Virus record (IMG/VR): IMGVR_UViG_3300035703_000010
Location: 1 to 64,000 of that record
Reading direction: 5' to 3' (one strand)
Length of the DNA: 64,000 bases
This document shows positions 29,195-50,853 of the stretch, piece after piece (position 1 is the stretch's first letter; each line of letters opens with the position of its first letter). The notes below the pieces were generated by a model. The model searched no databases. It was not told the origin of the DNA and saw nothing but the letters and a program-made list of their open reading frames with translations. A program made the translations under genes and the position numbers.

Positions 29195-30351
29195 GTTAAA
29201 TATTTCGAAAGTTTTTCATCATAAATCTTTGAAATTTGAGAATGGCTATACAGCTCAATTATTTTTTTTGAACCTTGTTCAGCCCATTCTTTTGGCGCAT
29301 TTGGAGCGCTTTTAAATTTTAAGATTTTTTTCTTAAAATCTTTTTCAACGGCTTCTGCCCATTTTGCATTTTTTACAAATATCTTTTCATCGACTCTACT
29401 TTGGTGTATTTGCTTAAGTTCATAATCTACATTTATGAACTTAGTATGATTCATAAAGTCCATATGTCCAGACCACCCAGTAGCGATGACAGGAAGACCA
29501 GATGCAGCTGCTTCTAGAAGAGGTAATCCATATCCTTCTCCTCTAGTTAAAGAAACTAAAGCTTTTATCTTTGGATGTTTATAAAGTGCAGATACGTCTT
29601 CATCGTTCATATCTCCATGAAGCAAATAAAATTTTGGAAATTGAGTTTTTCTTACTTCTTTAAGAAGAGCTTCTAAGTTTCTTAAAACAATATTTTTGTC
29701 TATCTTCGTATTTCTGCCTGCGTTTGTTTTTATTACTATTCCAACATCTTCATCTTTAGAAAATGTTTCACAAATCCACTTAATGGTAAAAAGTAAGTTT
29801 TTTCTATCATTATATGGATTGTTTCCGGTCATTTGTCCAAACAACAAAAAGTTAAATGAAGTCTTGATATTCGACAAGTCTATTTCTTTTTTAGACGTTA
29901 AAATTTCTTCTGGAAATGATTCAGGTATTATGTACGATGGTGTTTGTAACTCTGCTGAGTTTTGCAAACTTTGCAATGAATGTTTAGAAGGAACAACTAT
30001 GCAAGACATTTTATTGCAGTTTGAAACCCAAGATGGATTTGCTATATCCGTTTCAACTGCTGCAGTAATTCCAATGTTTGTTTTGCACAGATTTGGATCC
30101 CACTCATTCGGTAGTTGTAGCTGGATTGAAACGTCTGCTCTATAATCAGGATTAACTGTTCTTTCCATTATTTTTGAAATAAGACCATTGTCTTTATTTC
30201 TATCTAAAATCCATGGCGTGTCTCCCCATGGAGTTAATAAAAACTTAACATCTATATCATTTCTAGACAACAACCATTTTGCTACTTGTCTACTATGAAC
30301 GCCATATCCAGATTGAGTTAAAGCAGGCCCTCTAAAAATTACTTTTTTCAT
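29191..30351 (-). CDS. Glycosyltransferase family 4 (GT-B)
   Basis: SGYGVHSR N-terminal motif; VSLTRGEGYGLPLLEAAASGLPVIA (EX7E). Confidence 0.92.
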   Translation of the reverse strand: MKKVIFRGPALTQSGYGVHSRQVAKWLLSRNDIDVKFLLTPWGDTPWILDRNKDNGLISKIMERTVNPDYRADVSIQLQLPNEWDPNLCKTNIGITAAVETDIANPSWVSNCNKMSCIVVPSKHSLQSLQNSAELQTPSYIIPESFPEEILTSKKEIDLSNIKTSFNFLLFGQMTGNNPYNDRKNLLFTIKWICETFSKDEDVGIVIKTNAGRNTKIDKNIVLRNLEALLKEVRKTQFPKFYLLHGDMNDEDVSALYKHPKIKALVSLTRGEGYGLPLLEAAASGLPVIATGWSGHMDFMNHTKFINVDYELKQIHQSRVDEKIFVKNAKWAEAVEKDFKKKILKFKSAPNAPKEWAEQGSKKIIELYSHSQISKIYDEKLSKYLT

Positions 30352-30354
30352 TTT

Positions 30355-31599
30355 TCAAACCTCTGTAAGATTCCAGCTTTTGTATTTTTCGCTCCAGCTT
30401 TCGCATAAATCCGTCAAAGTTTCATCCCATTGTAAGATGACATTTTCGATATTGTAATCTTTTTGTGCATGTTCAAATGCTCTTTGACCAATTGATTTTC
30501 TTTTTTCAGGACCCCATTCATACATCTTCATAAACGCGTTTGTTAAAGATTCATGCGTGACATAATCTTCATAAATGTAAGGAACTAATTGATTTCCTAC
30601 AAGAGAGCTTGCATCAGGAGTTAGTGCAATTCCATATTGCTCACCAGTTTCATGATCTTCAACTTGTCGAGTCAAACCACCAGTTTTTATTGCTATAATT
30701 GGTTTTCCACACATCATTGCTTCTAATGTTGATAACCCAAATCCTTCATTACAGCTACGGTTTACAACCGTGTCGCAAGCGTTGTATAACTTGTTCATGT
30801 CTTTAAATTCTATTCTATCTTTTGAAAATACTACATGATCTCTTAGTCCCAACATTTCTACGACATGAAATAAATTTGGTCCTTCAGGATCTAACGGTTC
30901 AGTGTGCATTATTAATGTTGCTTTTGTATGACCGTGCTTTTCTCTTAATTGGTCAATGAACTTTTTCCAAGAAACGAGTATATCTGATGGCATTTTTCTA
31001 CGAGCATTTCTTGAAACGAATAACGCAGTAAAATGATCAACTTTTTCTTTTCCTAACAATGAAGACTTATATTTTTTTTGTTCTTCTTCAGGAAGAGGAT
31101 GATAGATTTCTTTAGGAATTGCATGAGGAATATAATTCGTTTTTTCAGGAAATCTTGAATGTACCATTTCATATGTTGGCCAATTAATACAATTTATTAA
31201 ATCGGTAGATTCATACAAAACTTTATTAAACTCTGGCCAAGGATAGTTATCCCATAGATGGTTATATGCTATTGGGCACACTTGATGAATTTCATCTTCC
31301 ATTTCCCAAACCCAAATAAAAAATCTTGGATCTGTAAAAAGCAATAAAACGTCGGGTTTTTCTGTAGCTAAAACCTGACGTAACATATTTCTATCTCCAA
31401 ATCCATTAGTGGGTTTGATTATAAAATCGTCGTTAACTACGACAGTTCTATAATCTTCATGTTTAACAGCTCCTCCAAAACACTTAAACTTCCATTTTCC
31501 AGTTGCGATTAATCCGTGAATTAACCACCTAGCTTGTGTACCTACGCCGCTTGAACTTAACGGATGGTCTGAAAGCATTAATACTGTTTTTTTCTGCAT
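30355..31599 (-). CDS. Glycosyltransferase family 4 (GT-B)
   Basis: SGVGTQAR; RNARRK; NEGFGLSTLEAMMCGKPII (EX7E). Confidence 0.92.
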   Translation of the reverse strand: MQKKTVLMLSDHPLSSSGVGTQARWLIHGLIATGKWKFKCFGGAVKHEDYRTVVVNDDFIIKPTNGFGDRNMLRQVLATEKPDVLLLFTDPRFFIWVWEMEDEIHQVCPIAYNHLWDNYPWPEFNKVLYESTDLINCINWPTYEMVHSRFPEKTNYIPHAIPKEIYHPLPEEEQKKYKSSLLGKEKVDHFTALFVSRNARRKMPSDILVSWKKFIDQLREKHGHTKATLIMHTEPLDPEGPNLFHVVEMLGLRDHVVFSKDRIEFKDMNKLYNACDTVVNRSCNEGFGLSTLEAMMCGKPIIAIKTGGLTRQVEDHETGEQYGIALTPDASSLVGNQLVPYIYEDYVTHESLTNAFMKMYEWGPEKRKSIGQRAFEHAQKDYNIENVILQWDETLTDLCESWSEKYKSWNLTEV

Positions 31600-31637: not shown

Positions 31638-32456
31638 TTAAGTGCAGTGTTCACTATTTTTAAATTCACACCACGTACAAGCATCTCTATTCTTTAGAGC
31701 GATACCTCTTTTTACTGAGGTTATCATATTGCTAACAACTTTTAAAGATCGTTTAATAGGAACTTCTCCAAGCGAAACCGAGAACAATTCGCAATGTTCG
31801 CCTGGCTTCGCAGACTTTTTTAACAACACGAATCCACAACGTACATCTTTAACTGGGACATTGGGATGTTTTTGACACCAATAGTTTTTATAAAGCGCCA
31901 ACTGCGCCTTGACCATATCATCGGATCGTTTTTCACGAAACCAACCACGGGCGGTTGTCTTCCAGTCTAGGATCCAGTAAATAGTCTCTCCTCGCTTACC
32001 CTTAGCTTTAATGACACCGTCAATAAACCCCTTGAAAGCATGCGGATGATTCTCTACGGCTTCGTAGAGCTGATGTTCTGCGTCAACGACTTCCCATTCT
32101 GGAAAAGTATCGTCTAAAAACTTTGGAACTTCCGATAAAATAATTTCAGCTTCAACTTTAGCTTTAGATAATGACTGTTTACTAAAGTCTTGATTTCCTT
32201 CATGCTGTGCCCATGCTTTTTCCATGTGCTCAAAAGCAATTTCAAATTTCATTTCTCTAGTCAATAGATAATGTTCGCATGAAGCATGTACTGCAGTTCC
32301 AAATTCAAGAACAGGAGATGGTTTCGAAAGGTCAATTTTTTTGATATGGATAAGATTGTGTCTATACGAACACTCTTTCCATAGCTTAATTTCTGAAAAT
32401 GAAACATGAGGTTTACCAGTAGGTAATACCTCAAAAGGGGGTGTTACTTCTTGCAT
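31638..32456 (-). CDS. PD-(D/E)XK nuclease, Cas4/AddB-like with Fe-S cysteines
   Basis: SFSEI..W.EC, FGTAVH, KGFIDG, ILDWKT, QL.LY, C-terminal CTWC..C. Confidence 0.9.
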   Translation of the reverse strand: MQEVTPPFEVLPTGKPHVSFSEIKLWKECSYRHNLIHIKKIDLSKPSPVLEFGTAVHASCEHYLLTREMKFEIAFEHMEKAWAQHEGNQDFSKQSLSKAKVEAEIILSEVPKFLDDTFPEWEVVDAEHQLYEAVENHPHAFKGFIDGVIKAKGKRGETIYWILDWKTTARGWFREKRSDDMVKAQLALYKNYWCQKHPNVPVKDVRCGFVLLKKSAKPGEHCELFSVSLGEVPIKRSLKVVSNMITSVKRGIALKNRDACTWCEFKNSEHCT

Positions 32457-32488: not shown

Positions 32489-33454
32489 TCAAACTTTAGG
32501 TTTCTTTGAGATTGCTCTACCTACTAGCTTTTCCCAATCTCTTTGTGGACGAACTTCCATGTTTTTGTGCCAAGCGCCATTCATTACTTTTGGATCTACT
32601 CCAAGCGTCTTTGCAATGCTAATCAAAGCGTTAATATCTTTAACAAAGCAGCTTCCTCCGAAACCGAAAGCAGGTTCTCCTGTATCATCTGCAGGCATTG
32701 GACCAGGAACTTTCCAATGCGAATTTCCTAGTCGCTTGTCTAAGGTCGCGTACTCAATTACTTTATCATAATCGATATTTGCTCCTGAAGAGTCTAAAGC
32801 TTGACAAATTTGATAAAACTCGTTTGCAAGAGCGACTTTGACAGCAAGATGAATGTTGGTAACATATTTTACCATTTCTGCTGTTGTTGATGAAGTTTTG
32901 ATAATTGGAACATTTGGAAATGCTGATTCAAAAACTTGCTTAACTTTGTTAATCCAAGGACGAGGGCCTCCAAGGATAATTCTGTTTTGATTTCGCATGT
33001 CATCGACTGCATTTGCTTCTGTTAAAAATTCTGGATTAAAAATCACTTTCAATCCAGTTTCAGCAAACTTTTTATTCCACATTTCTACTGAGCCTGGTGG
33101 AACGGTTGATTTGACGACTGCAATTCTTTCGCCTGGTACTGCGGCTAATTCTTTTAAAGCACCTTCGACGATGCTAAGATCGGCAGAGCCATCCTCAAAC
33201 ATAGGTGTAGGAAGGCACACAAAATAAACTTTAGAAAAGCCCGGTGTTCCACCTTCCTCATTATCTCCGATTAATTCTGCAATAGACCCAGGATAACCAG
33301 CAGCTGAATCTCCATGAGAAGGTAAAGATCCTTTAGCATATTTGCCTGCTTTGTCATAAGCATATACATCAAATCCGCGTTCTGAGAAAACAGTCGTAAG
33401 AGATCCTCCTACGAACCCTTGACCAATTACAGCGATAGATTTATTTTTTTTCAT
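32489..33454 (-). CDS. ugd: UDP-glucose/GDP-mannose dehydrogenase family, short form lacking C-terminal domain
   Basis: IGQGFVG Rossmann motif, VCLPTP, KSTVPPG, NPEFL.E, AEMVKY, GFGGSCFVKD catalytic Cys; only 321 aa. Confidence 0.88.
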   Translation of the reverse strand: MKKNKSIAVIGQGFVGGSLTTVFSERGFDVYAYDKAGKYAKGSLPSHGDSAAGYPGSIAELIGDNEEGGTPGFSKVYFVCLPTPMFEDGSADLSIVEGALKELAAVPGERIAVVKSTVPPGSVEMWNKKFAETGLKVIFNPEFLTEANAVDDMRNQNRIILGGPRPWINKVKQVFESAFPNVPIIKTSSTTAEMVKYVTNIHLAVKVALANEFYQICQALDSSGANIDYDKVIEYATLDKRLGNSHWKVPGPMPADDTGEPAFGFGGSCFVKDINALISIAKTLGVDPKVMNGAWHKNMEVRPQRDWEKLVGRAISKKPKV

Positions 33455-33486: not shown

Positions 33487-34389
33487 TCATTTGATGACGT
33501 TGATAATGGATTTCCATCCTTCATCATTTCTGATAAACTCAACTGAAGAATTTATTTTTTCTTGAGTTTCTTCAACGTTATCAAGAGTTTTTGTTATTAA
33601 ATCCAAGGACTCTTCAAAACTTTTATAAGTCAAAATTGAAGAAATATTATTTGTGTAATTCACACATTCTTCCTCATAATCCCTAATGCTTATGCATCCT
33701 CGTGAAGCAGCTTCTATGTCTTTAACCCATAACGCGTTTGCTGATATTTTATTCGAATTTACAACCCATTCTACTTGTTCGTTGTGTATAAAAATTTTTA
33801 TTTTAGATAAATTTTGTAAAAAGCCGTTATAAGATGATTGTTGCAAAATCGTAACGTTAATATTTTTTGATTTTAAAAAATCAAAAAACTTTTTTCTATA
33901 AGGGTGAATTTGTCCACAAAATCCAACGTCAATTTCTCTATCCTTCCAAGCAGGATCAGAAGAACAATACTCTGGTAAAACCCACATTTTTACAAACGTA
34001 GATTTCATACCTTTATCGATGATAAAGTTACTCCACCATTTTGAAGTATTTAAAAACGATTTAACATTTAGTTCATTATAAATTTTTTGATACGATCCTT
34101 TGTAACGAGAATCATCTTTAAAAGATTCCCAAGGATCTTGTTCATATACGAATATTTCTTGATTGTTAAGATACTTTTTTACTAAAGAAATATTATTGTA
34201 CAGAGTTCTTAGTTTTAAACATGATAAAAACTTATCAGCATGAGGCAAACTTTTTCCTGAGGCTACGTCGGAAATAGTACTAAAACTAAGATTAGTTTCA
34301 TCTTGCAACGTTTTAAATAACTGATGTTGAAAACAATTGCTTTTTACATATTGGTAATCATCAATAATTACGTGAAGATTTAATTTCAT
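33487..34389 (-). CDS. Putative glycosyltransferase (CgeB/YkvP-like GT-B)
   Basis: REIDVGFCGQ.HPYR.....FL, KIKIFIH, K.IEAA.RGC pattern. Confidence 0.65.
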   Translation of the reverse strand: MKLNLHVIIDDYQYVKSNCFQHQLFKTLQDETNLSFSTISDVASGKSLPHADKFLSCLKLRTLYNNISLVKKYLNNQEIFVYEQDPWESFKDDSRYKGSYQKIYNELNVKSFLNTSKWWSNFIIDKGMKSTFVKMWVLPEYCSSDPAWKDREIDVGFCGQIHPYRKKFFDFLKSKNINVTILQQSSYNGFLQNLSKIKIFIHNEQVEWVVNSNKISANALWVKDIEAASRGCISIRDYEEECVNYTNNISSILTYKSFEESLDLITKTLDNVEETQEKINSSVEFIRNDEGWKSIINVIK

Positions 34390-35089
34390 TTAGTATTAAT
34401 TCCTTTGAATAATTTTTAATAGAAAAATTAAATGCATTTTGAAAATCATCATCAGAATAGTCTACATCATTATATTTTGATGAAAGATTAAATCCTAATA
34501 AACATAAACCTCTTATTTTATCGAAGTTATTTTTTTGCCAAGCATCATAAACTTTGTTGAAAATATCTGACTGATTTTTTTTGCCTCTATGAAACCCATA
34601 GTGAAATGCTTGTTTATCTGAAGGAAACCAACAATGCATTCCAGCGGGTATTAATTCTTTAGGAAGTTCATTTCCTCTAATAACAATGTTATGTCCAGAA
34701 TCTGCTCGATCTGGATATAACTTGTTTACTTTTGTTGATACGTTCACTGTATTTCTTAAACATGTGAGTCCGTATATTAGGCTATCGGTCATGTAATCAT
34801 GAAGCCATGCTTGAACTCCAGTTAGCTTATTATTAATTTTAAAAAGTTCAGCAAATGTTTTTATAACTAAATTGTGAGACAATATTGTGTCTGCATCTAC
34901 TTTTAAAAAAAGATCATAATCTTTTTTTGATTTATTCCATTCTAAAAAAAGCTTTTCATGTGCTTCTTTTTCAGGCAAGTTAGAAACAACATAATGAAAT
35001 GTTTGAACATCTATTTGAGAAGCTATCGATTCCTTGCATTTCTCAAATTCATTTTCTCCACACTCCATCGTTCCTACAAAAACTTTCAT
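34361..35089 (-). CDS. Putative glycosyltransferase (GT-A, DxD)
   Basis: YDLFLKVDADT DxD motif; island context. Confidence 0.65.
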   Translation of the reverse strand: MKVFVGTMECGENEFEKCKESIASQIDVQTFHYVVSNLPEKEAHEKLFLEWNKSKKDYDLFLKVDADTILSHNLVIKTFAELFKINNKLTGVQAWLHDYMTDSLIYGLTCLRNTVNVSTKVNKLYPDRADSGHNIVIRGNELPKELIPAGMHCWFPSDKQAFHYGFHRGKKNQSDIFNKVYDAWQKNNFDKIRGLCLLGFNLSSKYNDVDYSDDDFQNAFNFSIKNYSKELILNEIKSSRNY

Positions 35090-35107: not shown

Positions 35108-35599
35108 TTATAAAATTTTGTACATACAAATTTGATCAAAAAATTTTTCATCTCTGTATAAAGAAGAAATTAATTTACCTTCTTCTATAAACCCAAGATT
35201 TTTATATACTCTTTGACCTATTAGATTGTATTCTGCTGTCGTTAAACTTACTCTATGAAGTCCGATCTCTTTACAATAATCTAACATTAACGACCACATG
35301 AATTTTGCATATCCTTTACCTCTAAAATTTTTATGAATATCTGCTCCTAATATGCAATTTCTATTAGTAAAATCTATATTGTAAAATTTAGTAAATCCTA
35401 CTCTTTCAGAATTTATTTCAAATATTTTTCTTTTTTGAGAATTATCTTTTGATATTTTTTCCCACCAAGATAAATGTTGATTTAAAGTTATAGGATTTGG
35501 ATTGGTTAAATTTTTTAAAACTTCTGGATCATTGTGTAATTCAACTAACCATTCATGGTCGCCATGATTAATCTCTCTTAATATCATGTTTTGTTGCAT
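35108..35599 (-). CDS. GNAT N-acetyltransferase, PseH/RimJ-like
   Basis: LREI...D...L..L.ND, FRGKGYA acetyl-CoA motif, N......Y..LGF..EG; adjacent to the aminotransferase. Confidence 0.88.
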   Translation of the reverse strand: MQQNMILREINHGDHEWLVELHNDPEVLKNLTNPNPITLNQHLSWWEKISKDNSQKRKIFEINSERVGFTKFYNIDFTNRNCILGADIHKNFRGKGYAKFMWSLMLDYCKEIGLHRVSLTTAEYNLIGQRVYKNLGFIEEGKLISSLYRDEKFFDQICMYKIL

Positions 35600-35602
35600 A
35601 TG

Positions 35603-36742
35603 TCATTTTTTAGATAATTTTATTGTTAGATTTGCGATGTAAGTTATGTCATCTTCATTTAACCACCATCCGCATGGCAAAGAAAATTGATAAGAAGAAA
35701 ATTCTCTAACTCCAGGTAAATTAGATTTAAATTTTTTAAAAGTAGTGTAGTCATCGTTAGGAACGTGTACAACACCAGCTTGAATTCCTTCTTTATTTAA
35801 CTTTTCTAATAGTTCATCTCTAGAAATTTTTTTATTTTTTAATTTCATGGTATAAACCCACGACGATGATTCAGAAAGACTAGGCTTCTTTGCAGGAATT
35901 ACATCTTTGCTTTTACTAAATAGTTTATCATATAAAGCAGAATTTTGTTTATGTTTATTGATAATGAAATCGATATAAGGAAGTTGTGATAATCCAACTG
36001 CTGCAGTTAGATTATTCATATTAAATTTGTATCCAGCTTCTAATATGTCGACGTCCCATTGTTGACCCTTCCAATTTCCTTTTGAGTCTTTTGCAAAATC
36101 TCTATCTAATCCAAACCATTTTAAAGATTTTGACTTTTTATAATCATTTTCGTCTAAACAAACTAATGCCCCACCATCTCCAGTTGTTATGTGTTTAATT
36201 GCTTGAAAACTATAACAAGTAAAATCTGCGTAATTATGAATTTGCGAATTGTTATAACGAGATCCAAACGCATGAGCTGCATCTAAAATTAGTTTTATAT
36301 TTTTTTCTTTGCAAATTTTACTTAGTTCTAAAAGTTCAGGTGGAGTTCCTGCCCAAGCTACAGCCATAACTGCTTTTGTTTTGTCAGTAATTTTTTTTGC
36401 AACATCGGCTGGATCAATCATTCCATGATCTGGGTTTATATCCGCCCAAATTATATTTGCACCAATAGTATGAATTGGAGTATTAGTAGCTACGCAAGTC
36501 ATTGGAGTCGTGATGACTTCATCACCTTGTTGAACTCCAGCTAATTTTAAAGCTAGAGTTAAAGCAGAAGTGCAACTATTAACTAATATTAGTTTATTAG
36601 TTTCAAATATTTCTTGCATTTTTTGAGTTAGCTCAGTGACTTGAATTCCTTCATTAATGAATCCTGATTCTAATACATCTTTAATTTTTTCTAAAGATTC
36701 TTTTACTGGTATATGAACTTTAAAAAGAGGATAGCTTTTCAT
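35603..36742 (-). CDS. DegT/DnrJ/EryC1/StrS PLP-dependent sugar aminotransferase (PseC-like)
   Basis: NSCTSAL, GDEVIT, DAAHAFG, SFQAIKHITTGDGG (PLP lysine), LPCG. Confidence 0.93.
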   Translation of the reverse strand: MKSYPLFKVHIPVKESLEKIKDVLESGFINEGIQVTELTQKMQEIFETNKLILVNSCTSALTLALKLAGVQQGDEVITTPMTCVATNTPIHTIGANIIWADINPDHGMIDPADVAKKITDKTKAVMAVAWAGTPPELLELSKICKEKNIKLILDAAHAFGSRYNNSQIHNYADFTCYSFQAIKHITTGDGGALVCLDENDYKKSKSLKWFGLDRDFAKDSKGNWKGQQWDVDILEAGYKFNMNNLTAAVGLSQLPYIDFIINKHKQNSALYDKLFSKSKDVIPAKKPSLSESSSWVYTMKLKNKKISRDELLEKLNKEGIQAGVVHVPNDDYTTFKKFKSNLPGVREFSSYQFSLPCGWWLNEDDITYIANLTIKLSKK

Positions 36743-36745
36743 TTT

Positions 36746-37768
36746 TTACTTTCTATTAGTTGCAATTTCTTCTATTTTTAAACCTTGAAATTTTTCTAGT
36801 GGCATGTCAATTATGCCAAGATCTTTTAACTTTTCAAGTAATTGTTGCTTTGACATAACGTCATCTGCGCTAGTGTAGGTAAATCTTTTTTCAGAACCAG
36901 CATGATAAGCAGGTCCTATTACAAAATGAGTGTTTATATCTTTTGTTCGAACGGATTCTGATTCATTAACTAAATCTTCATGTTTTTTCTCACCAGGTCT
37001 TAGTCCTATTGTTTTTATAGGTTTATTATATAATGTTGAGAAAATTTCTGCAAGATCCCCAATTCTCATTGAAGGAATTTTTGGTATCCAAGTTTCTCCG
37101 CTATTTCCATTTTGTAAAGCTGATACTATTAGATCTACGCTGTCATCTAAAGTCATAACAAATCTTGTCATGTCAGGATCAGTGACAGTTAAATAATCAG
37201 AACTTTCAGCTTGATATTTAAATAAAGGTATAATGCTTCCTCTAGACTCTAGAACGTTGCCATATCTAGTGCATAAAAATTTGATGTTTGTTAAATCATT
37301 CTTTGATTGAGAAGTAACCAATCTTTCAGATATACCTTTGCACATGCCGTAAACATTGACTGGAGAACAGGCTTTATCGGTACTCACGAATAAAACTTTC
37401 TCTAATTTCCAACTGTCATTAAAATTTGAAGAAAGCTCTTTAACAGACTTTATTACGTTTTGAGTTCCTAAAAGATTTGTTTGAACGCTTTCAAATGGAC
37501 TTAATTCGCATGTATCTACTTGCTTTAAAGCAGCAGCGATAATTATTACTTGAGGTCTATAATGATAAATGACTTCTTTTACTCTAGAAAAATCTCTAAT
37601 ATCTCCTACAAAAAATTCTAAATTTTTTGGATAAGACAATTCATTTTTTATCGTCCAATGTTTTGCTTCATCTCTTGAATAAACAGCTACATCATTATTG
37701 GATGATAAAAATCTAGTAATTAATTTTCTTCCTAAAGAGCCTGTCCCACCAAATATTAGATATTTCAT
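36746..37768 (-). CDS. pseB: UDP-GlcNAc 4,6-dehydratase, PseB/FlaA1-type
   Basis: GGTGSLG, YSRDE.K, AAALKQV, STDKA, YGMCK (YxxxK with Tyr, as in PseB rather than the Met of FnlA/CapE), RYGNV..SRGS, MTRF, GLRPGEK.HE. Confidence 0.8.
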   Translation of the reverse strand: MKYLIFGGTGSLGRKLITRFLSSNNDVAVYSRDEAKHWTIKNELSYPKNLEFFVGDIRDFSRVKEVIYHYRPQVIIIAAALKQVDTCELSPFESVQTNLLGTQNVIKSVKELSSNFNDSWKLEKVLFVSTDKACSPVNVYGMCKGISERLVTSQSKNDLTNIKFLCTRYGNVLESRGSIIPLFKYQAESSDYLTVTDPDMTRFVMTLDDSVDLIVSALQNGNSGETWIPKIPSMRIGDLAEIFSTLYNKPIKTIGLRPGEKKHEDLVNESESVRTKDINTHFVIGPAYHAGSEKRFTYTSADDVMSKQQLLEKLKDLGIIDMPLEKFQGLKIEEIATNRK

Positions 37769-37800: not shown

Positions 37801-38637
37801 TTAAAGTTTAACAACACTTTCAAACGAAATATCAAAAAGTTCATCAGTTCTTGTCGGTTTATAATCAATAGACAAATTGTAATTTCTGCTTCCATTTATA
37901 ACTAGATGAGGGTTTTCATTTCCTAGTTTAGAGTGCCAAATTCCACCATCTATAATTGCTGACTTTTGATACTTTTTATAATAAATTTTTTGATAATCTG
38001 TTTCATTAAACTTTTTAAGATTGAAAAGTTCAAAAAAAACTTCTTTCATTGTTTGCATTCTTGTAAGAGAAGGAAGTTTTGGTAAAAAATTGCAAGTGTA
38101 TATCTCGTGATCTTTATCAACAAGATTAAACTCTACTTTTTTATTTTCTATGAAATTATCTTGAACCACCCACGCGTATCTTTTGGAGTCTTTGTTTATA
38201 TTTCTTTTATCATATAAGTTTCTTTTTGAAACGGAAAATTCTTCAGTCCTTACAAATCCAACATCATTATGCTTGTTTAAAAACTCTTCACAATGTTTTA
38301 ACTTGCTGAATGCATCATCAAAATGAATAATGTCTGATTCTATTATGTAAAGATACTTGTAATCTTTATTCATTATTTTTTGGTAATTTTTTAAACACCA
38401 AAAAATAGCGCTCCAAAATCCAATATTAGTTTTACTTTTAAGAACGTTTTTAAAGTTGTCTTTTAAAAGATCTATACTTCCTGGATAAGTAGAATCATTA
38501 TCAAATACTAAAAGATCTTTCTTTAAATCATCATCTAAAAGACTTGAAAGATTATTTACGACTTGCTTCAACACTTCAAATCTAGTGCTTTCTTTCGTAC
38601 ATGTTACTAAAAGAATTAGTGTATCATTCATAAACAC
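37801..38637 (-). CDS. Putative glycosyltransferase family 2
   Basis: LLVFDNDS, NIGF..A, YLYIIESD motifs. Confidence 0.75.
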   Translation of the reverse strand: MFMNDTLILLVTCTKESTRFEVLKQVVNNLSSLLDDDLKKDLLVFDNDSTYPGSIDLLKDNFKNVLKSKTNIGFWSAIFWCLKNYQKIMNKDYKYLYIIESDIIHFDDAFSKLKHCEEFLNKHNDVGFVRTEEFSVSKRNLYDKRNINKDSKRYAWVVQDNFIENKKVEFNLVDKDHEIYTCNFLPKLPSLTRMQTMKEVFFELFNLKKFNETDYQKIYYKKYQKSAIIDGGIWHSKLGNENPHLVINGSRNYNLSIDYKPTRTDELFDISFESVVKL

Positions 38638-39757
38638 CTTTTAGAAATTTTTCCCAAACTTCCCAGTAATAATCATTAAAAATTTTAAGATTCATTTCTT
38701 CCATCCCAAATTTTAAGCTCCTTTCATAACCTGGATCTTTTAAAATTTTTTCTATTGCTTCTGCAGCTTCATTTGGAGTTTCAACAATAACTGAGTTAAT
38801 TTTGTCTACTAAATAGTTTGTAGAATTAGATGAAAGAACATATTTTTTTGTTGTAATAATAGGAATTCCTGAGTTTAAACAATAATAAAAAACTCCGCCG
38901 CCCCAATCAGTTTGTTTGAAGTGTACTGCTGCTTTTAAATTTTTAGTAATTTTATAAGATTGCCTTGGAGAAATTGTCGAAAATTTACCAGTTACGCCAT
39001 TTTTTTCAGAAAATCTTATATCTGCGCCGGCTGACCGAATGTTTCCTCCAAAATTTTTTACTTCTTCAACGTTTTTTTCTTTTAAAATTAAATTCATTTT
39101 AACAAAAAACTTGTAGTCATCTGGTTGCCTGACTTCAAAATTATGATTAAATGATGCAAATTGTAATGAATCTACAACATTAAACTCGCTATCTATGTCT
39201 AACAATTTAGTTTCAAAATCTACGCAAAAAACATTAACGTTATTAACGTTCGTATGTTTAGATTCATAGTTAGCTGGAATAAACTTAGCTACGTTTTTTG
39301 GTCTGTGATTTCCAGGATCATGGTTCCATGCATTCATTGTTGATGAAACCCATTTTGCGTTTGGAAAATATTCGTTAGCTACCTTGAAGTAATGTAATAA
39401 ACTTTCTTCGCCTCCTCTTAAAGTATGAAAAATTTCTATTCCGGGATTTTTTTCATTTAAATCTATTATTTCGCAAGATATGTCTTCATCATATAAGCAA
39501 CATGATTTAAATGTTTTCAGAAAAAAATCTTCTCCAAAAAATGCATTGTTTTCCTGGAATGGATAAAGATCAAGATTTCTTTTGCTTTTATCAATTGAAG
39601 ATTTGCACAATAAGATAGGCCATGTAGCTATTTTTTCCCATTTAAGTCCTAAAGTGCCAGGTTTTGGTACAAAAACTTTATGGCCTAACTTTGAATAATG
39701 ATAGATCATAGATGTTAATCCACTTCTATCATCAGTTGGAAAAATAAAAATATTCAT
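38624..39757 (-). CDS. Putative glycosyltransferase (divergent GT-B)
   Basis: KLGHKVF; C-terminal AVHFK..DWGGG.FYY.L..GIPII...D..N..IVET..EAAEAI. Confidence 0.7.
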   Translation of the reverse strand: MNIFIFPTDDRSGLTSMIYHYSKLGHKVFVPKPGTLGLKWEKIATWPILLCKSSIDKSKRNLDLYPFQENNAFFGEDFFLKTFKSCCLYDEDISCEIIDLNEKNPGIEIFHTLRGGEESLLHYFKVANEYFPNAKWVSSTMNAWNHDPGNHRPKNVAKFIPANYESKHTNVNNVNVFCVDFETKLLDIDSEFNVVDSLQFASFNHNFEVRQPDDYKFFVKMNLILKEKNVEEVKNFGGNIRSAGADIRFSEKNGVTGKFSTISPRQSYKITKNLKAAVHFKQTDWGGGVFYYCLNSGIPIITTKKYVLSSNSTNYLVDKINSVIVETPNEAAEAIEKILKDPGYERSLKFGMEEMNLKIFNDYYWEVWEKFLKGVYE

Positions 39758-39775: not shown

Positions 39776-40687
39776 TTAAAAATCAAATTCTGGTCCTTCT
39801 AACAAAACCTTGCTTTGAGGATATTTTTTTTGATCTCCATTTTCAGTCTGATAAGTCCATCCAATAGGATTGCATACATCAACAAAACTTAAAGGAGCGA
39901 AAGAATCTTGTTTTTTATAATACTCTTCTGGAGAAATTTTTTCATAATATTCTCCAGAAGAAGAAGGAGCATCTAAATAATACCCATATCGTTTATTGCC
40001 TCGTATGAAAGCGTATCCTCCTCTTGGGTCGTTCCATACAGGGGCAAATAAAGGAACCCAACTGCAATAATTCAATTGCAAATTAGGCAATTTTGATTTT
40101 AAATGAGAATCGTACCAGTCTTCTGATCTACCCCAAAATTCTTGAGTTTGTGGCCAATCAACTGGATAATTTCCAAACTTTTCAAAAATTTCTTTTTTAA
40201 AGAAACCCATAGTCGGAAAGTGGTTATCTAACGGCAAATAGTATTTGTAGTTTTTATTTTTTATTACTAAATTTTTATTAAATTTATTTTGAATAGTGGA
40301 TCTTCTAACCGCGTTAACTTCCAGAGAAAGCATTTCTTTAGAAGAATAGAAATCTTCTACAACTTTTTCTAAAACTTCTTTATTGCCAATAAATTGTAAA
40401 TCATCTTGAAGAAACAAGATTACATCATGCTTTGCATTTTCTATGATAATGTTTTTTGCAATATATTCATCATTAACCCAATTTCTTTCTTCAGGACTTC
40501 TAGAAAATAGTTGATGAATAACCCCGCTTTTTTTCTGCTCTTCAAGATATTCTTTAAGACCATGTTCTATGCTACAATTGTCAACAGCAATAACTTGATG
40601 ATCATTAGAAATTTCTTTTATGCTATTAAAAAGAGATTTTGTGTATTTTAAACGATTAAACGTTGTTATTCCAATTGTTATGTTCAC
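39776..40687 (-). CDS. Glycosyltransferase family 2
   Basis: ITIGITTFNR, IAVDNCS, ILFLQDD. Confidence 0.88.
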   Translation of the reverse strand: MNITIGITTFNRLKYTKSLFNSIKEISNDHQVIAVDNCSIEHGLKEYLEEQKKSGVIHQLFSRSPEERNWVNDEYIAKNIIIENAKHDVILFLQDDLQFIGNKEVLEKVVEDFYSSKEMLSLEVNAVRRSTIQNKFNKNLVIKNKNYKYYLPLDNHFPTMGFFKKEIFEKFGNYPVDWPQTQEFWGRSEDWYDSHLKSKLPNLQLNYCSWVPLFAPVWNDPRGGYAFIRGNKRYGYYLDAPSSSGEYYEKISPEEYYKKQDSFAPLSFVDVCNPIGWTYQTENGDQKKYPQSKVLLEGPEFDF

Positions 40688-40696
40688 TTTTTAACC

Positions 40697-41584
40697 TCAG
40701 CTTAAAATAATCTTCCAAAACGATTCCATAGATTCTTTCCACTTTGGAGGAGTTTTAGAATTTTTTAAAAAATTTCTTTTTGATAATATCTGTTCAATTT
40801 CAAAGAAATTTTTATAAACATGTTGTTTACCTACAAATTCAACGGCGCCGCCTCCTTCAGCATGAACGTATGTTGGAAGTCCAACTGCAATTGATTCTAA
40901 AACGTGATTAGGTCCAGGATCATGTCTAGACGCGCTAACATAAACGTCATATTTACATAATTCATCAGCTAAAGCTTTTCCGTATAGCGGAGGTATCGTT
41001 TTTGAATTAGAAAAAGTTCCTCTATCTCTTCCTATATACGTGAATGATATTTTATCGTTTTTAGTACTTAAGTAATCTAAAAATTCGTAAACATCAAAAC
41101 CTTTTAAGTAGTTATTAGACCAATGATGAGTTACAATTTTTAAAACATCATCATTCTTTTCTTGATAATTTGTATTAAAAAAATCTTCATCAACTCCGTT
41201 ATATAAAACGGATTGATTTTTGCAAATCCACCCTTTGTTATTAAAGTAATTTTTCATCCAATTACTTACAAAAATAGTTTTTGTATTAATCGCGCTACAT
41301 TGTAATAACAATTGATCCATATGTTCTGTGTTTTTTCTTGCGTCACATTCATTAATCCTTTGAATGACGGGTATTTTTTTTCTTGATATAAATTTTGCAG
41401 CATCATTTATATCGAATGATTTATCTCTTCGAGGATCGACCAAAAAAATTAGATCAGTATCATCAGTTAACTTATCAGTTAATTCAACTCCATCTGGAAC
41501 AGATGAATAAACTGCTTTAACAAAATTATTGCCACCGCCGTACGGTCCAGAAATAGGAGCTCTATTAATTGCAATTTTAACCAT
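40697..41584 (-). CDS. Glycosyltransferase family 4-like
   Basis: GPYGGG, YNGVD, KG.D, DVYVSASRHDPGPNHVLES.AVGLP. Confidence 0.85.
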   Translation of the reverse strand: MVKIAINRAPISGPYGGGNNFVKAVYSSVPDGVELTDKLTDDTDLIFLVDPRRDKSFDINDAAKFISRKKIPVIQRINECDARKNTEHMDQLLLQCSAINTKTIFVSNWMKNYFNNKGWICKNQSVLYNGVDEDFFNTNYQEKNDDVLKIVTHHWSNNYLKGFDVYEFLDYLSTKNDKISFTYIGRDRGTFSNSKTIPPLYGKALADELCKYDVYVSASRHDPGPNHVLESIAVGLPTYVHAEGGGAVEFVGKQHVYKNFFEIEQILSKRNFLKNSKTPPKWKESMESFWKIILS

Positions 41585-41603: not shown

Positions 41604-42506
41604 TTATAATGATTGTATCAAAGTTCTATAAGGATCATATCCTTTAGGAAGTTTCCATTCTTCTACGTCTGGTATGCTAGGAATTGCAAAAGTTACATCG
41701 TCTGAAATTGACGATTGAGGTAAAATTTGAGAAGCAATTCCTATGTTTCTAGAAACCACTGGAATGTTTAAAAGACCGCATTCAATAAGCGATTGTGGAC
41801 CTCCTTCGCATCTAGCAGTTACAGGATATAAATCTAATGTTTGATATAGCTCATTAATCGTTTTTTGATCTGGTCTATCGAAATATGTAAATGAAATATT
41901 CGACGCAGTTAATCGATTGATAATATACTGCCTTCTCCATCCTGCTAAAACTACATGTAAATTTTGTTTTTCTTTTGACCATTTTTCTATTGCGTCAGCT
42001 AGAAGATCTGGTCCTTTTTCTAGTTTTGGAGAAATTAAGTCTTTACCTTCTGTATCTCTTTGAAATGATCCAATTAAAAATCCATTTTCAGGTAAATTAT
42101 GTTTTTTTCTTAGACTTTGTTTTTCTTCTGTTTGATACCAAATATTTTGATTTGCCCAATACTTTAATAAGTGAATAGGCTTAGAAGTAAACTTTCTAAT
42201 AAAGTCTGACGTTTGTTCATTGTAAACATGATATGCTGTAGTAATTTTATCTCTTAACAAAAAATTATGAACGTCAATGTCTTTAAACTTTTCTGGAACT
42301 ATATGATGTACTGTCGTTAGAACTTTTTTATTTTTTAATAGTCCTTTAAAAAACATTTGTTCCCAACACCAATCAGCAAGTAGCCAAACAACATCAGCGT
42401 CTTTGGGATTTAACACGCTGATATCTTTGTTGTCTTCATTCCACTCTTTTACAAAACGGTCAACAATCCAGTCTTCTGATGGCGGGAGGACATACACTTT
42501 ATTCAT
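41604..42506 (-). CDS. Glycosyltransferase family 4-like
   Basis: IGSFQRD, KGPD, DLYPVTARCEGGPQSLIEC....PVVS. Confidence 0.85.
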   Translation of the reverse strand: MNKVYVLPPSEDWIVDRFVKEWNEDNKDISVLNPKDADVVWLLADWCWEQMFFKGLLKNKKVLTTVHHIVPEKFKDIDVHNFLLRDKITTAYHVYNEQTSDFIRKFTSKPIHLLKYWANQNIWYQTEEKQSLRKKHNLPENGFLIGSFQRDTEGKDLISPKLEKGPDLLADAIEKWSKEKQNLHVVLAGWRRQYIINRLTASNISFTYFDRPDQKTINELYQTLDLYPVTARCEGGPQSLIECGLLNIPVVSRNIGIASQILPQSSISDDVTFAIPSIPDVEEWKLPKGYDPYRTLIQSL

Positions 42507-43438
42507 GAATGTAAAACGCTTTCTAAAAACGAAAGATAATCATTTAATGTTCGTTGCATTGAAACATCAAAACAGTGAGATAAATCATTCTTATGGGGTA
42601 AACGATTCTTTATTTGTGCTACGTCAATTTTAGGAGGATTATCGTAGTCAGTTAGTTCAAAGTTATATTCTTTTTCTTCTTTTAAAATAACTCCATACCC
42701 CTGAACTAGTTCTTTTGTTCCTCCATGTTCAGAACAAATAACTGGTGTTCCTTGTGATAAGGATTCTACTACAGTATTTGGACAATGGTCTAACCATGCA
42801 AGATGTAACATCCAATTAGCTGCAGAAAATATTTCTAAACAAACTTCGTGGGGTTGAGATCCTGCATAAAAAACGTGAGGATCAGCGACTTTTATTGGAT
42901 TAGATCCTAAAACTATAAGAGCAGCTGAAGAATAAAAATTTCTTAAATGTTTATATAACTCTATGTTTTGTAACAAACGTTTTTGAGGATGCCAATTTGC
43001 AGAACATACGAATAACATTTCGTATTGTTGTCTAATTTGTTCTAATACAGGTATTTGAAATTTTTTAATTTCTGGTGCATTAATACCGTTTCGAATTATT
43101 TCGAATTTTTTTGGATATCCCCACCACTTCGTAGTCATGCCTTTATCAAATGCTGACTGCCATATTACAGCATCAGCTGATTGATAAAGCTTTTTTATAG
43201 AAGAGTTTTTTGTTTCAAACTCTTCAGGAGAAAACCAAATTCCATCAAGCCTTTGAACAACTTTTTTTGCTAATGGTCTGCCAGTAGGTTCAATAAAAAC
43301 TATTGAAATTTCAGCTTTTCTACCATCATATAATTCAACTTCATGACCAGATTCTATTAACGCCATAGCTAATCTCTTTCCAAAAGAATTTGGACCAGAG
43401 TTTGAGCTCATATTAACGTTGTCAAGATGTATTTTCAT
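42503..43438 (-). CDS. Glycosyltransferase family 4-like
   Basis: SGP.SF..RL, IRNGI, KRL, LHLAWLDHCPNTVVESLSQGTPVICSEHGGTKELV. Confidence 0.88.
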   Translation of the reverse strand: MKIHLDNVNMSSNSGPNSFGKRLAMALIESGHEVELYDGRKAEISIVFIEPTGRPLAKKVVQRLDGIWFSPEEFETKNSSIKKLYQSADAVIWQSAFDKGMTTKWWGYPKKFEIIRNGINAPEIKKFQIPVLEQIRQQYEMLFVCSANWHPQKRLLQNIELYKHLRNFYSSAALIVLGSNPIKVADPHVFYAGSQPHEVCLEIFSAANWMLHLAWLDHCPNTVVESLSQGTPVICSEHGGTKELVQGYGVILKEEKEYNFELTDYDNPPKIDVAQIKNRLPHKNDLSHCFDVSMQRTLNDYLSFLESVLHS

Positions 43439-47280: not shown

Positions 47281-47300
47281 TATTTATAATAGCTAAATAA

Positions 47301-50814: not shown

Positions 50815-50853
50815 TTGTGCAATGTTTGCAGGATTAGTTGTACCTTTGTACGC

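What the first reader, a model, noticed from the sequence alone, without database searches (positions are those of the whole stretch)
35108..37768. PseB-PseC-PseH-like trio without PseG/PseI/PseF: a rare diacetamido-deoxyhexose as likely donor
Seen: consecutive dehydratase (STDK, YxxxK), PLP aminotransferase and GNAT in pathway order; no PseG hydrolase, PseI synthase or PseF CMP-transferase in the window. Established: PseB/C/H make UDP-2,4-diacetamido-2,4,6-trideoxy-L-altrose en route to pseudaminic acid, and PglF/E/D make UDP-diNAc-bacillosamine, the linking sugar of several bacterial protein glycosylation systems. Inference: the phage stops at the UDP-diacetamido sugar and transfers it directly, possibly as the protein-linking sugar.
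Basis: partly seen in the sequence, partly recalled or inferred. Interest (0 to 1): 0.6.

Follow-up and report, generated by a model that had tools for sequence, protein, structure and literature searches.

The report
Phage amino-sugar pathway feeding a glycosylation module
A freshwater jumbo phage carries three enzymes that most likely turn UDP-GlcNAc into a rare N-acylated diamino-deoxy sugar, set inside a conserved block of about eleven soluble glycosyltransferases, which points to a phage-built glycan rather than a pseudaminic acid pathway.

Summary
Three tightly packed minus-strand genes at 35108-37768 encode a Polysacc_synt_2 4,6-dehydratase, a DegT aminotransferase and a GNAT, with their catalytic motifs intact.

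They are not PseB/C/H orthologues. All three score below NCBIfam's curated cut-offs. The dehydratase belongs to a viral clade next to Megavirus Mg534, an inverting UDP-GlcNAc 4,6-dehydratase/5-epimerase. It lies apart from the cellular dehydratases that sit beside NeuB/PseI.

No PseG, PseI/NeuB or CMP-transferase is found in the 204-kb record. None is found in three collinear relatives that are 91-100% complete. So the "stops at the nucleotide sugar" reading is supported.

The trio lies in a roughly 18-kb module of 11 predicted soluble glycosyltransferases, whose core is conserved in order in about 33 viral loci. In relatives the slot after the aminotransferase holds a formyltransferase, a hexapeptide acyltransferase or other acylation genes in place of, or beside, the GNAT. 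That supports N-acylation of a 4-amino sugar.

The sugar's stereochemistry and the acceptor remain inferred. Virion protein is favoured as acceptor. DNA and the host envelope are not excluded. Nothing supports a "protein-linking" position.

The parts
36746..37768 (-). NAD-dependent nucleotide-sugar 4,6-dehydratase (340 aa), Mg534-like. The likely reaction is inverting UDP-GlcNAc 4,6-dehydration with 5-epimerisation.
   Evidence: Pfam PF02719 E 5e-79. NCBIfam PseB 271 bits and FnlA 214 bits, both below cut-off. PDB 4tqg (Mg534) E 6e-85, CapE 2e-60, PseB 3e-55, PglF 2e-35. 4tqg is identified as Mg534 in PMC10117803. Motifs. Clade placement.
35603..36742 (-). PLP-dependent sugar aminotransferase (379 aa), probably a 4-aminotransferase acting on the 4-keto product.
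   Evidence: Pfam PF01041 E 1.3e-84. NCBIfam PseC 244 bits against a cut-off of 424, LegC 194, ArnB 192. PDB AtmS13 8e-55, CalS13 3e-48, PseC 1.6e-42, PglE 1e-26. K183 in SFQAIK. It follows the dehydratase directly in all loci of the phage clade.
35108..35599 (-). GNAT N-acetyltransferase (163 aa), the likely N-acetylase of the 4-amino sugar.
   Evidence: Pfam PF13302 E 2e-17. NCBIfam PseH is the top model for 22 of 22 clade members but below cut-off. By PDB profile, SpeG scores 85 bits, H. pylori PseH 37 and C. jejuni PseH 29. In relatives the slot holds formyl- or hexapeptide acyltransferases, in place of or beside the GNAT.
34361..35089 (-). GT-A fold glycosyltransferase (242 aa) with no Pfam hit. 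It is conserved directly after the acyltransferase slot.
   Evidence: AF2 pLDDT 91.6. Best Foldseek matches are the SunS/ThuS S-glycosyltransferases, WrtF, TarP and SpsA. D65-A-D67 is invariant in 25 homologues. Found in 32 loci.
33487..34389 (-). Compact GT-B fold glycosyltransferase (300 aa) with no Pfam hit. It is not PseG-like.
   Evidence: AF2 pLDDT 94.1. Best Foldseek matches are Gtf3/GtfC, an Actinobacillus glucosyltransferase, SenB and PimA. No PseG entry appears among the matches listed. Found in 31 loci.
32489..33454 (-). Truncated UDP-glucose/GDP-mannose dehydrogenase-like protein (321 aa). The catalytic Cys motif is kept and the C-terminal UDP-binding domain is missing.
   Evidence: Pfam PF03721 and PF00984 only. 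TIGR03026 189.3 bits against a cut-off of 189.8, matching profile positions 2-295 of 413. GFGGSCFVKD motif present. No PF03720 anywhere in the record. Found in 34 loci.
37801..38637 (-). GT-A (GT2-like) glycosyltransferase (278 aa), conserved directly upstream of the dehydratase.
   Evidence: ESM Atlas feature score 0.97 and structure TM 0.60-0.67 to Glycos_transf_2 clusters. DN.S and ESD motifs are conserved. Found in 33 loci.
38624..39757 (-). Protein of unknown function (377 aa), present only in the closer relatives.
   Evidence: No Pfam, NCBIfam or PHROG hit. Found in 8 loci.
39776..40687 (-). GT2 glycosyltransferase (303 aa).
   Evidence: PF00535 E 2.4e-10.
40697..41584 (-). Probable GT-B glycosyltransferase (295 aa); the match is weak.
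   Evidence: PF00534 E 0.004, below cut-off. Conserved in 29 loci.
41604..42506 (-). GT4-type glycosyltransferase (300 aa).
   Evidence: PF00534 E 2.3e-9. Found in 31 loci.
42503..43438 (-). GT4-type glycosyltransferase (311 aa).
   Evidence: PF00534 E 6.3e-9. Found in 29 loci.
43435..43800 (-). Conserved small protein of unknown function (121 aa).
   Evidence: No family hit. Found in 27 loci.
43797..44531 (-). GT2 glycosyltransferase (244 aa).
   Evidence: PF00535 E 6e-17. Found in 29 loci.
44528..45238 (-). RmlA-like sugar-1-phosphate nucleotidylyltransferase (236 aa).
   Evidence: PF00483 E 6e-47. rmlA_long 204 bits, below cut-off. Present only in the window and two relatives.
45235..47175 (-). 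Large GT2-domain protein (646 aa) and first gene of the module.
   Evidence: PF00535 at residues 333-454. Found in 25 loci.
31638..32456 (-). PD-(D/E)XK nuclease (272 aa) embedded in the module.
   Evidence: PF12705 E 1.4e-16. PHROG exonuclease families.
30355..31599 (-). GT4 glycosyltransferase (414 aa).
   Evidence: PF00534 E 3e-16.
29191..30351 (-). GT4 glycosyltransferase (386 aa) and last glycosyltransferase of the module. Tail and baseplate genes follow on the same strand.
   Evidence: PF00534 E 1e-9. Baseplate wedge protein at 20853-22688.

Best explanation
The trio is a phage-encoded nucleotide-sugar pathway. It ends at the activated sugar and feeds the surrounding glycosyltransferases.

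Proposed steps (all inferred from homology):
1. The Mg534-like dehydratase converts UDP-GlcNAc to UDP-2-acetamido-2,6-dideoxy-L-arabino-hex-4-ulose.
2. The DegT enzyme aminates C4.
3. The GNAT acetylates that amine. The product is a UDP-2,4-diacetamido-2,4,6-trideoxy-hexose, most likely L-configured. The L-altro form made by PseH is one candidate.

The product is not hydrolysed and condensed to a nonulosonic acid. It is used by one of 11 soluble glycosyltransferases of a conserved, roughly 18-kb module.

Shown here:
- the gene content and gene order;
- the absence of the later pseudaminic acid genes;
- the absence of membrane machinery;
- the swapping of acyltransferases among relatives.

Inferred: because no flippase, polymerase, initiating transferase or oligosaccharyltransferase is present, the glycan is probably built in the cytoplasm directly on a soluble acceptor. 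Virion structural protein is the most likely acceptor, as in giant-virus fibrils and mycobacteriophage capsids. The substrate, the stereochemistry and the acceptor are all inferred.
For: Enzyme identities and intact motifs.

The closest characterised dehydratase is Mg534, an inverting UDP-GlcNAc 4,6-dehydratase/5-epimerase.

Dehydratase tree:
- The phage dehydratase-aminotransferase clade has 31 rows with SH-aLRT 94.
- It is sister (support 99) to a clade of giant-virus and other viral contigs plus three Bacteroidota contigs, many of which carry an RmlD-like reductase nearby.
- Dehydratases with NeuB within 10 kb fall in another clade.

NeuB, PseG and CTP_transf_3 searches:
- NeuB, PseG and PseI are absent from the own record, and PF02348 gives only a weak match on the RmlA-like gene.
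- NeuB is absent from 18 related viral records.
- PseG and CTP_transf_3 are absent from five large relatives, three of them 91-100% complete.
- The same approach finds NeuB right beside PseB-like dehydratases in cellular genomes, which serves as a positive control.

The conserved order GT...GT-dehydratase-aminotransferase-[acyltransferase]-GT-GT holds in about 33 viral loci.

The acyltransferase slot varies among relatives: GNAT, Formyl_trans_N, hexapeptide acyltransferase, SDR plus GNAT-like, ATP-grasp plus HAD.

The two unknown genes after the trio fold as GT-A and GT-B transferases, not as PseG.

Membrane machinery is missing:
- No transmembrane segment in any glycosyltransferase or sugar enzyme of the module; only the small 101-aa ORF at 28889-29194 has one N-terminal hydrophobic stretch.
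- No polytopic membrane protein in the 204 kb.
- No Wzx/Wzy-like protein in the complete 369-kb relative.

The module is co-directional and contiguous with the baseplate and tail genes.
Against: - No enzyme reaches a curated equivalog threshold, so substrate and stereochemistry are extrapolated.
- The aminotransferase's nearest solved relatives act on dTDP-sugars.
- By solved structures the GNAT resembles polyamine acetyltransferases more than PseH.
- The record is only about 60% complete.
- Peripheral, soluble glycosyltransferases are also normal in lipid-linked O-antigen assembly, so a host-envelope target is not excluded.
- A divergent ThyA-like gene elsewhere in the genome leaves room for a modified-base acceptor.
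- There are no expression or glycan data. No RNA run holds the locus.
Confidence: 0.6

Rival explanations
1. The trio is the front half of a true pseudaminic (or related nonulosonic) acid pathway. PseG, PseI and PseF would be supplied by the host, or by the unsequenced 40% of the genome.
For: The best NCBIfam models are PseB, PseC and PseH. The record is only 60% complete. One unrelated viral contig, L064, does carry a dehydratase, an aminotransferase and NeuB together.
Against: Collinear relatives that are 100%, 99% and 91% complete lack NeuB, PseG and CTP_transf_3. The dehydratase lies outside the NeuB-linked clade. The lineage spans genomes of 31% to 56% GC, so a shared host Pse pathway is unlikely. 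The genes after the trio are glycosyltransferases.
Confidence: 0.07
2. The product is the D-gluco sugar diNAc-bacillosamine (or its galacto epimer), made through the retaining 4-keto intermediate as in PglF/E/D.
For: The chemistry (dehydratase, 4-aminotransferase, N-acetyltransferase) is the same. From background knowledge, PseB-type enzymes can slowly release the D-xylo 4-keto sugar. Giant viruses do make diNAcBac.
Against: The dehydratase scores 125 bits to PglF against 288 to Mg534, and it is a short soluble protein. The aminotransferase scores 97 bits to PglE against 149 to PseC. The acetyltransferase is a GNAT, not a PglD-type hexapeptide enzyme.
Confidence: 0.12
3. The module glycosylates phage DNA (hypermodified hydroxymethyl-pyrimidines) rather than protein.
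For: A divergent thymidylate-synthase-family gene (93 bits against a cut-off of 327) sits beside a thymidine kinase at 160-162 kb. T4 alpha-glucosyltransferase is among the structural matches of the 300-aa GT-B protein. All glycosyltransferases are soluble.
Against: By my background knowledge, eleven glycosyltransferases plus a swappable N-acyl tailoring slot exceed any described DNA glycan. The ThyA-like gene is poorly conserved in the collinear relative (27% identity). The module sits with the tail and baseplate genes, not with the nucleotide-metabolism genes.
Confidence: 0.1
4. The module rebuilds a host envelope glycan (O-antigen, capsule or S-layer glycan) on the host's lipid carrier during infection.
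For: Soluble GT2 and GT4 enzymes are typical of lipid-linked glycan assembly. The N-acyl diversity resembles O-antigen diversity.
Against: The complete relative has no initiating phosphoglycosyltransferase, flippase, polymerase or ligase. The module is a core, syntenic part of a lytic-looking myophage genome next to structural genes.
Confidence: 0.15
5. The GNAT is not part of the sugar pathway. It would be a SpeG-like polyamine or protein acetyltransferase, and the sugar would be transferred as the free 4-amine.
For: By PDB profile, SpeG scores 85 bits against 37 and 29 for the PseH structures.
Against: The gene keeps a fixed position between the aminotransferase and the next glycosyltransferase in 27 loci. 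Several loci without it carry formyl- or hexapeptide acyltransferases there, and L026/L027 carry none directly after the aminotransferase. PseH is the top NCBIfam model in 22 of 22 members.
Confidence: 0.08

Closest known systems
Megavirus chilensis Mg534-Mg539 fibril glycosylation cluster (UDP-L-RhaNAc / L-QuiNAc)
   Same: The dehydratase is the closest characterised homologue (4tqg, E 6e-85) and the two groups are sister clades. In both cases the dehydratase sits in a virus-encoded cluster with several soluble glycosyltransferases and no host-type membrane machinery.
   Different: Megavirus reduces the 4-keto sugar (Mg535) and 2-epimerises it (Mg536). The phage transaminates and N-acylates it instead. 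No reductase was found in the window's module, though RmlD-like reductases occur in 11 loci, several of them phage-clade relatives. The host domain and virion type also differ.
PseB/PseC/PseH, the first three steps of CMP-pseudaminic acid synthesis
   Same: The three reaction types and the gene order are the same. They are the best NCBIfam models. A GNAT-type acetyltransferase is used, as with PseH.
   Different: All three score below the equivalog cut-offs. The dehydratase lies outside the NeuB-linked clade. No PseG, PseI or PseF is present in the lineage.
PglF/PglE/PglD (UDP-diNAc-bacillosamine) and the Moumouvirus australiensis diNAcBac genes
   Same: Both use a dehydratase, an aminotransferase and an N-acetyltransferase, and the UDP-diacetamido-trideoxyhexose is used directly as a donor. 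A viral precedent exists in Moumouvirus.
   Different: The dehydratase is not PglF-like (125 bits, no membrane domain). The aminotransferase is farther from PglE than from PseC. The acetyltransferase is a GNAT, not a hexapeptide-repeat enzyme.
Mycobacteriophage virion glycosylation (Freeman et al. 2023, as cited in PMC12619734)
   Same: Phage-encoded glycosyltransferases are thought to decorate structural proteins in the cytoplasm.
   Different: By background knowledge, those phages carry about two glycosyltransferases and use host sugars. Here there are 11 glycosyltransferases plus a dedicated rare-sugar pathway. Virion glycosylation is not shown here.
'Moraphages', freshwater jumbo phages with four core glycosyltransferase orthogroups (PMC12619734)
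   Same: They share the habitat, the genome size class, a distant T4-like myovirus nature and core glycosyltransferases. Their predicted Bacteroidota hosts fit this window's nearest cultured relative for the baseplate protein, a Flavobacterium phage.
   Different: Membership was not tested, because no shared identifiers were available. The paper does not mention a dehydratase, an aminotransferase or an amino-sugar pathway.

Membership tests
PseB (TIGR03589, inverting UDP-GlcNAc 4,6-dehydratase of the Pse pathway) | Score above the curated equivalog cut-off (407.75 bits) | tested here: not met
   270.6 bits.
PseB | Groups with dehydratases that are genomically linked to PseI/NeuB | tested here: not met
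   In the tree, NeuB-linked dehydratases form another clade. No NeuB lies within 10 kb in any phage-clade locus.
PseB / FnlA / Mg534 class of short soluble Polysacc_synt_2 dehydratases | SDR fold with a GxxGxxG motif, a TDK motif and YxxxK | tested here: met
   GGTGSLG at 7-13, STDK at 129-132 and Y140/K144. The protein aligns along its length to Mg534, CapE and PseB.
Mg534-like viral dehydratases | Closest sequence relationship and sister-clade position | tested here: met
   4tqg scores 288 bits against at most 207 for any other solved structure. The phage clade is sister to the clade of giant-virus and other viral contigs, support 99.
Mg534-like viral dehydratases | UDP-GlcNAc as substrate with inversion at C5 | not testable with these tools
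   This needs an enzyme assay with NMR.
PseC (TIGR03588) | Score above the curated cut-off (423.5 bits) | tested here: not met
   243.7 bits. AtmS13 and CalS13 score higher than PseC among solved structures.
DegT/DnrJ/EryC1 sugar aminotransferases | Family domain and PLP-binding lysine | tested here: met
   PF01041 at 284.9 bits. K183 lies in SFQAIK and aligns with the AtmS13 motif.
PseH (TIGR03585) | Score above the curated cut-off (93.1 bits) | tested here: not met
   61.8 bits. It is the top model in 22 of 22 clade members, yet the solved PseH structures score only 37 and 29 bits against 85 for SpeG.
Complete pseudaminic acid pathway | PseG hydrolase, PseI synthase and PseF CMP-transferase present | tested here: not met
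   All are absent from the own record. NeuB is also absent from 18 relatives, and PseG and PF02348 from five large relatives, three of them 91-100% complete.
PglF/E/D bacillosamine pathway | PglF-type dehydratase and a hexapeptide-repeat PglD acetyltransferase | tested here: not met
   PglF scores 125 bits against 288 for Mg534. The acetyltransferase is a GNAT. Hexapeptide acyltransferases occur only in some relatives.
Lipid-carrier (Wzx/Wzy or OTase-dependent) glycan assembly | Initiating transferase, flippase, polymerase or oligosaccharyltransferase, i.e. polytopic membrane proteins | tested here: not met
   A hydropathy scan finds no ORF with four or more transmembrane segments in the 204 kb and none that looks Wzx/Wzy-like in the complete 369-kb relative. 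The scan is crude, and a PglC-type monotopic enzyme would be missed.

The most novel reading that the evidence does not exclude
A widespread lineage of freshwater jumbo myophages has collinear genomes ranging from 31% to 56% GC. It carries a core, lipid-carrier-independent glycosylation factory of about 11 soluble glycosyltransferases. The factory's signature sugar would be an L-configured 2-acetamido-4-acylamido-2,4,6-trideoxyhexose, a sugar I know only as a pathway intermediate and not as a glycan residue. It would be made with a dehydratase shared with giant viruses, and its N-acyl group (acetyl, formyl and others) would be swapped between relatives. The glycan would decorate the virion, making it a bacteriophage counterpart of Megavirinae fibril glycans.
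Probability: 0.35. Interest if true: 0.75.

Novelty: new variant of a known kind. Interest (0 to 1): 0.6.

Why it matters
Virus-encoded synthesis of rare bacterial-type sugars is established for giant viruses. Virion glycosylation by one or two glycosyltransferases is established for mycobacteriophages.

A conserved module with a dedicated amino-sugar pathway and about 11 glycosyltransferases in tailed phages would extend autonomous viral glycosylation to bacteriophages on a much larger scale. The shared dehydratase lineage would link phage and giant-virus sugar pathways. The module would also supply a natural set of interchangeable N-acyl tailoring enzymes and compact soluble glycosyltransferases for glyco-engineering.

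If the glycan is on the particle, it bears on phage-host recognition and on how phages present themselves to grazers or to immune systems.

Tried and rejected
- **Megablast of the locus against GenBank phages:** no match. A protein search found no cultured phage with a dehydratase above 42% identity.
- **Profile searches of the 242-, 300- and 278-aa proteins against PDB sequences:** nothing significant. Folds had to come from AF2/Foldseek and the ESM Atlas.
- **The 300-aa protein as a cryptic PseG:** rejected. It is a Gtf3/GtfC-like GT-B transferase, and TIGR03590 finds nothing.
- **T4-type late promoter TATAAATA:** there are only 5 copies in 204 kb, although two of them head the two minus-strand gene arrays in the window. 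This is too few to call it a promoter class.
- **Sigma-70 promoter and terminator scan:** uninformative. All terminator-like sites lie within coding sequence.
- **First attempt at NeuB seeds:** it picked the wrong ORFs. It was corrected, and the weak "NEUB" hits of 20-26% are to be ignored.
- **RNA evidence:** no RNA run holds the locus.
- **Literature searches for a phage PseB/C/H-type pathway or jumbo-phage nucleotide-sugar clusters:** no prior description found.


Full report
**1. The observation**

The finding's coordinates match three consecutive minus-strand ORFs exactly: 37768..36746 (340 aa), 36742..35603 (379 aa) and 35599..35108 (163 aa). They are separated by 3-nt gaps.

Pfam assigns them as follows:
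- Polysacc_synt_2, E 5e-79
- DegT_DnrJ_EryC1, E 1.3e-84
- GNAT/Acetyltransf_3, E 2e-17

The dehydratase has GGTGSLG at 7-13, STDK at 129-132 and Y140xxxK144. The aminotransferase has K183 in SFQAIK. The GNAT has an RGKGYA acetyl-CoA loop.

The order is not an assembly artefact. In an independent aquatic metagenome, one 4,474-nt contig spans 34276-38637 with six differences. Near-identical sequence (a quarter or more of the sampled words) occurs in freshwater or aquatic runs of at least five further studies.

**2. Where the window comes from**

The window is the first 64 kb of a 204,651-bp IMG/VR virus record, which CheckV rates as 60% complete.

The flanking genes include:
- a baseplate wedge protein;
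- ClpP, a helicase and a PIN-PhoH protein.

The nearest cultured relatives of the baseplate protein are Flavobacterium and Microcystis myophages, at about 30% identity.

A complete relative of 369,475 bp with terminal repeats (G003) is collinear with this genome over 112 ORFs, with a mean amino-acid identity of 47%. Its GC content is 56%, against about 31% here.

**3. What the three enzymes are**

PseB, PseC and PseH are the best NCBIfam models, but each falls below its curated cut-off:

| Enzyme | Model | Score (bits) | Cut-off (bits) |
|---|---|---|---|
| Dehydratase | PseB | 271 | 408 |
| Aminotransferase | PseC | 244 | 424 |
| GNAT | PseH | 62 | 93 |

Dehydratase. Among solved structures it is by far closest to 4tqg (E 6e-85, 288 bits). 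CapE scores 207, FnlA 196, PseB 191 and PglF 125. PMC10117803 identifies 4tqg as Megavirus chilensis Mg534, an inverting UDP-GlcNAc 4,6-dehydratase/5-epimerase.

Aminotransferase. It is closest to the 4-aminotransferases AtmS13 and CalS13 (190 and 168 bits). PseC scores 149 and PglE 97.

GNAT. It resembles SpeG more than the solved PseH structures (profile scores of 85 against 37 and 29 bits). Even so, PseH is the top NCBIfam model for all 22 clade members.

**4. Dehydratase phylogeny**

I built a tree of 119 dehydratases from viral and cellular loci. Left out were the near-duplicates L004, L007, L018, L021, L022, L039 and L129, and rows shorter than 250 aa.

The tree shows the following:
- The window falls in a clade of 31 phage sequences (SH-aLRT 94).
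- This clade is sister (support 99) to a clade of giant-virus MAG contigs and other viral contigs plus three Bacteroidota contigs. Many loci of that clade carry an RmlD-like reductase near the dehydratase, and only a few carry a weak aminotransferase hit.
- Dehydratases with a NeuB/PseI gene within 10 kb form a different clade. These are 16 cellular loci and one viral contig.

In GTDB species genomes, the closest cellular hit is 58% identical. It lies on a 13.5-kb contig of a MAG that carries the phage-type trio. All other cellular hits are at or below 46%.

**5. Is the rest of the pseudaminic acid pathway anywhere?**

- PseI, NeuB and PseG are absent from the 204 kb. PF02348 touches only the RmlA-like gene, and weakly.
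- NeuB is absent from 18 related viral records.
- PseG and CTP_transf_3 are absent from five large relatives, of which three are 100%, 99% and 91% complete.
- The method finds NeuB directly beside PseB-like dehydratases in a Nitratidesulfovibrio genome and in others, which is a positive control.
- The two unannotated genes after the trio are not hidden pathway enzymes:
  - The 242-aa protein folds with high confidence (pLDDT 91.6) as a GT-A transferase with an invariant DxD motif. Its best matches are SunS/ThuS, WrtF and TarP.
  - The 300-aa protein (pLDDT 94.1) folds as a compact GT-B transferase. Its best matches are Gtf3/GtfC, an Actinobacillus glucosyltransferase and SenB. No PseG entry is among the matches listed.
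- The 278-aa gene upstream of the dehydratase is also GT2-like.

**6. The module and its relatives**

From 47175 down to 29191, the minus strand carries 11 predicted glycosyltransferases, an RmlA-like nucleotidylyltransferase, the trio, a truncated UDP-glucose-dehydrogenase-like gene, a PD-(D/E)XK nuclease and two genes of unknown function.

The array runs on without large gaps into the tail and baseplate genes.

About 33 viral loci share this order:

GT2(646)-GT2(244)-GT(295)-121-GT4(311)-GT4(300)-GT-A(278)-dehydratase-aminotransferase-[slot]-GT-A(242)-GT-B(300)-...-UGDH-like

The slot after the aminotransferase varies:
- It holds the GNAT in 27 loci.
- Several loci without the GNAT hold a Formyl_trans_N protein or a hexapeptide acyltransferase there. 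L026 and L027 have the aminotransferase followed directly by the GT-A gene, with the hexapeptide gene further downstream. Some loci carry such an acyltransferase as well as the GNAT.
- Further variants nearby are a FabG-like SDR with a GNAT-like protein, an ATP-grasp enzyme with a HAD hydrolase, and a glyoxalase-like protein with a HAD-like protein. RmlD-like reductases and methyltransferases also occur nearby.

This is the pattern expected if the aminotransferase product is N-acylated and the acyl group is under diversifying selection.

**7. Acceptor**

- None of the module's glycosyltransferases or sugar enzymes has a predicted transmembrane segment. Only the small 101-aa ORF at 28889-29194 has one N-terminal hydrophobic stretch.
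- The 204-kb record has no ORF with four or more such segments.
- The complete relative has nothing that looks like Wzx or Wzy.

This favours cytoplasmic assembly on a soluble acceptor. The module's position beside structural genes, its kinship with the Megavirus fibril cluster and the protein- or peptide-directed nearest structural neighbours of two glycosyltransferases all make virion protein the most likely acceptor. None of this is proof.

Two alternatives remain open:
- A divergent ThyA-family gene next to a thymidine kinase leaves a DNA acceptor possible.
- A host-envelope target using host machinery cannot be excluded.

Nothing indicates that this particular sugar is the linking residue.

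**8. Comparison with what is known, and novelty**

The chemistry is that of PseB/C/H or PglF/E/D, but membership in either family fails the tests run here. The closest known system is the glycosylation gene cluster of giant viruses.

A 2025 paper on freshwater 'moraphages' notes four core glycosyltransferase orthogroups but no sugar pathway. Whether this phage belongs to that lineage was not tested.

Literature searches found no description of such a phage pathway.

I rate it a new variant of a known kind. It is of moderate to high interest, mainly because of the size, conservation and modular acyl-swapping of the module.

Noticed in passing
window 32489-33454 (-): A UDP-glucose/GDP-mannose dehydrogenase-like protein of 321 aa. 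It keeps the NAD domain, the central domain and the catalytic GFGGSCFVKD cysteine motif but lacks the C-terminal UDP-binding domain. PF03720 occurs nowhere in the 204-kb record. The truncated form is conserved (58-94% identity) in about 33 related phage loci, and some relatives carry a second, distant paralogue.
   Followed up: partly
window 1665-8480 (-), three ORFs of 1252, 451 and 534 aa: Fibre-like proteins rich in Ser/Thr (about 27%). At least the first two share an N-terminal motif. The region has raised GC (0.42-0.45, against about 0.31 elsewhere). None has a counterpart in the collinear 369-kb relative. They could be receptor-binding fibres and are candidate glycan acceptors.
   Followed up: partly
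G003 (loci L131-L149), whole record, compared with G000: The complete 369-kb relative is collinear with this genome (112 shared ORFs, mean identity 47%) but has 56% GC against about 31%. One phage lineage with the same glycosylation module therefore appears to infect hosts of very different base composition.
   Followed up: partly
G000 159515-162056 (outside the window; locus L130): A GalE/TviC-like epimerase, a divergent thymidylate-synthase-family protein (93 bits against a cut-off of 327) and a thymidine kinase lie in a row. The ThyA-like protein could be a pyrimidine hydroxymethylase. Its specificity residue was not checked.
   Followed up: partly
window 31638-32456 (-); L002 11035-11574, 14004-14576 and 15426-16007; L015 15642-16385: Nuclease genes sit inside the glycosylation module: a PD-(D/E)XK nuclease here, and NUMOD3 and Endonuclease VII type genes in relatives. 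Some lie between the dehydratase and the aminotransferase. They look like mobile homing endonucleases and may drive the exchange of tailoring genes.
   Followed up: no
window 8599-8606 (-) and 47281-47288 (-): TATAAATA is rare in this AT-rich genome: 5 copies in 204 kb, and 3 in the window against 8.8 expected. Its only two intergenic copies lie 119 and 106 nt upstream of the first genes of the two long minus-strand arrays, the fibre genes and the glycosylation-plus-tail array.
   Followed up: partly
window 28140-28892 (-): A 250-aa protein between the glycosyltransferases and the structural genes gives a weak PHROG match (E 1.2e-5) to a T4 gp55-type late sigma factor.
   Followed up: no
L064 (IMGVR_UViG_3300005939_000434), about 8.9-10.8 kb: An unrelated 24.9-kb viral contig carries a PseB-like dehydratase (36% identity), an aminotransferase and a NeuB/PseI homologue together. 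Some viral contigs may therefore encode a fuller nonulosonic acid pathway, in contrast to the lineage studied here.
   Followed up: no
window 53514-54878 (+): A fusion protein with a PIN domain and PhoH (454 aa), next to ClpP (50209-50814) and a DEAD_2/Helicase_C_2 helicase (50815-52500).
   Followed up: no
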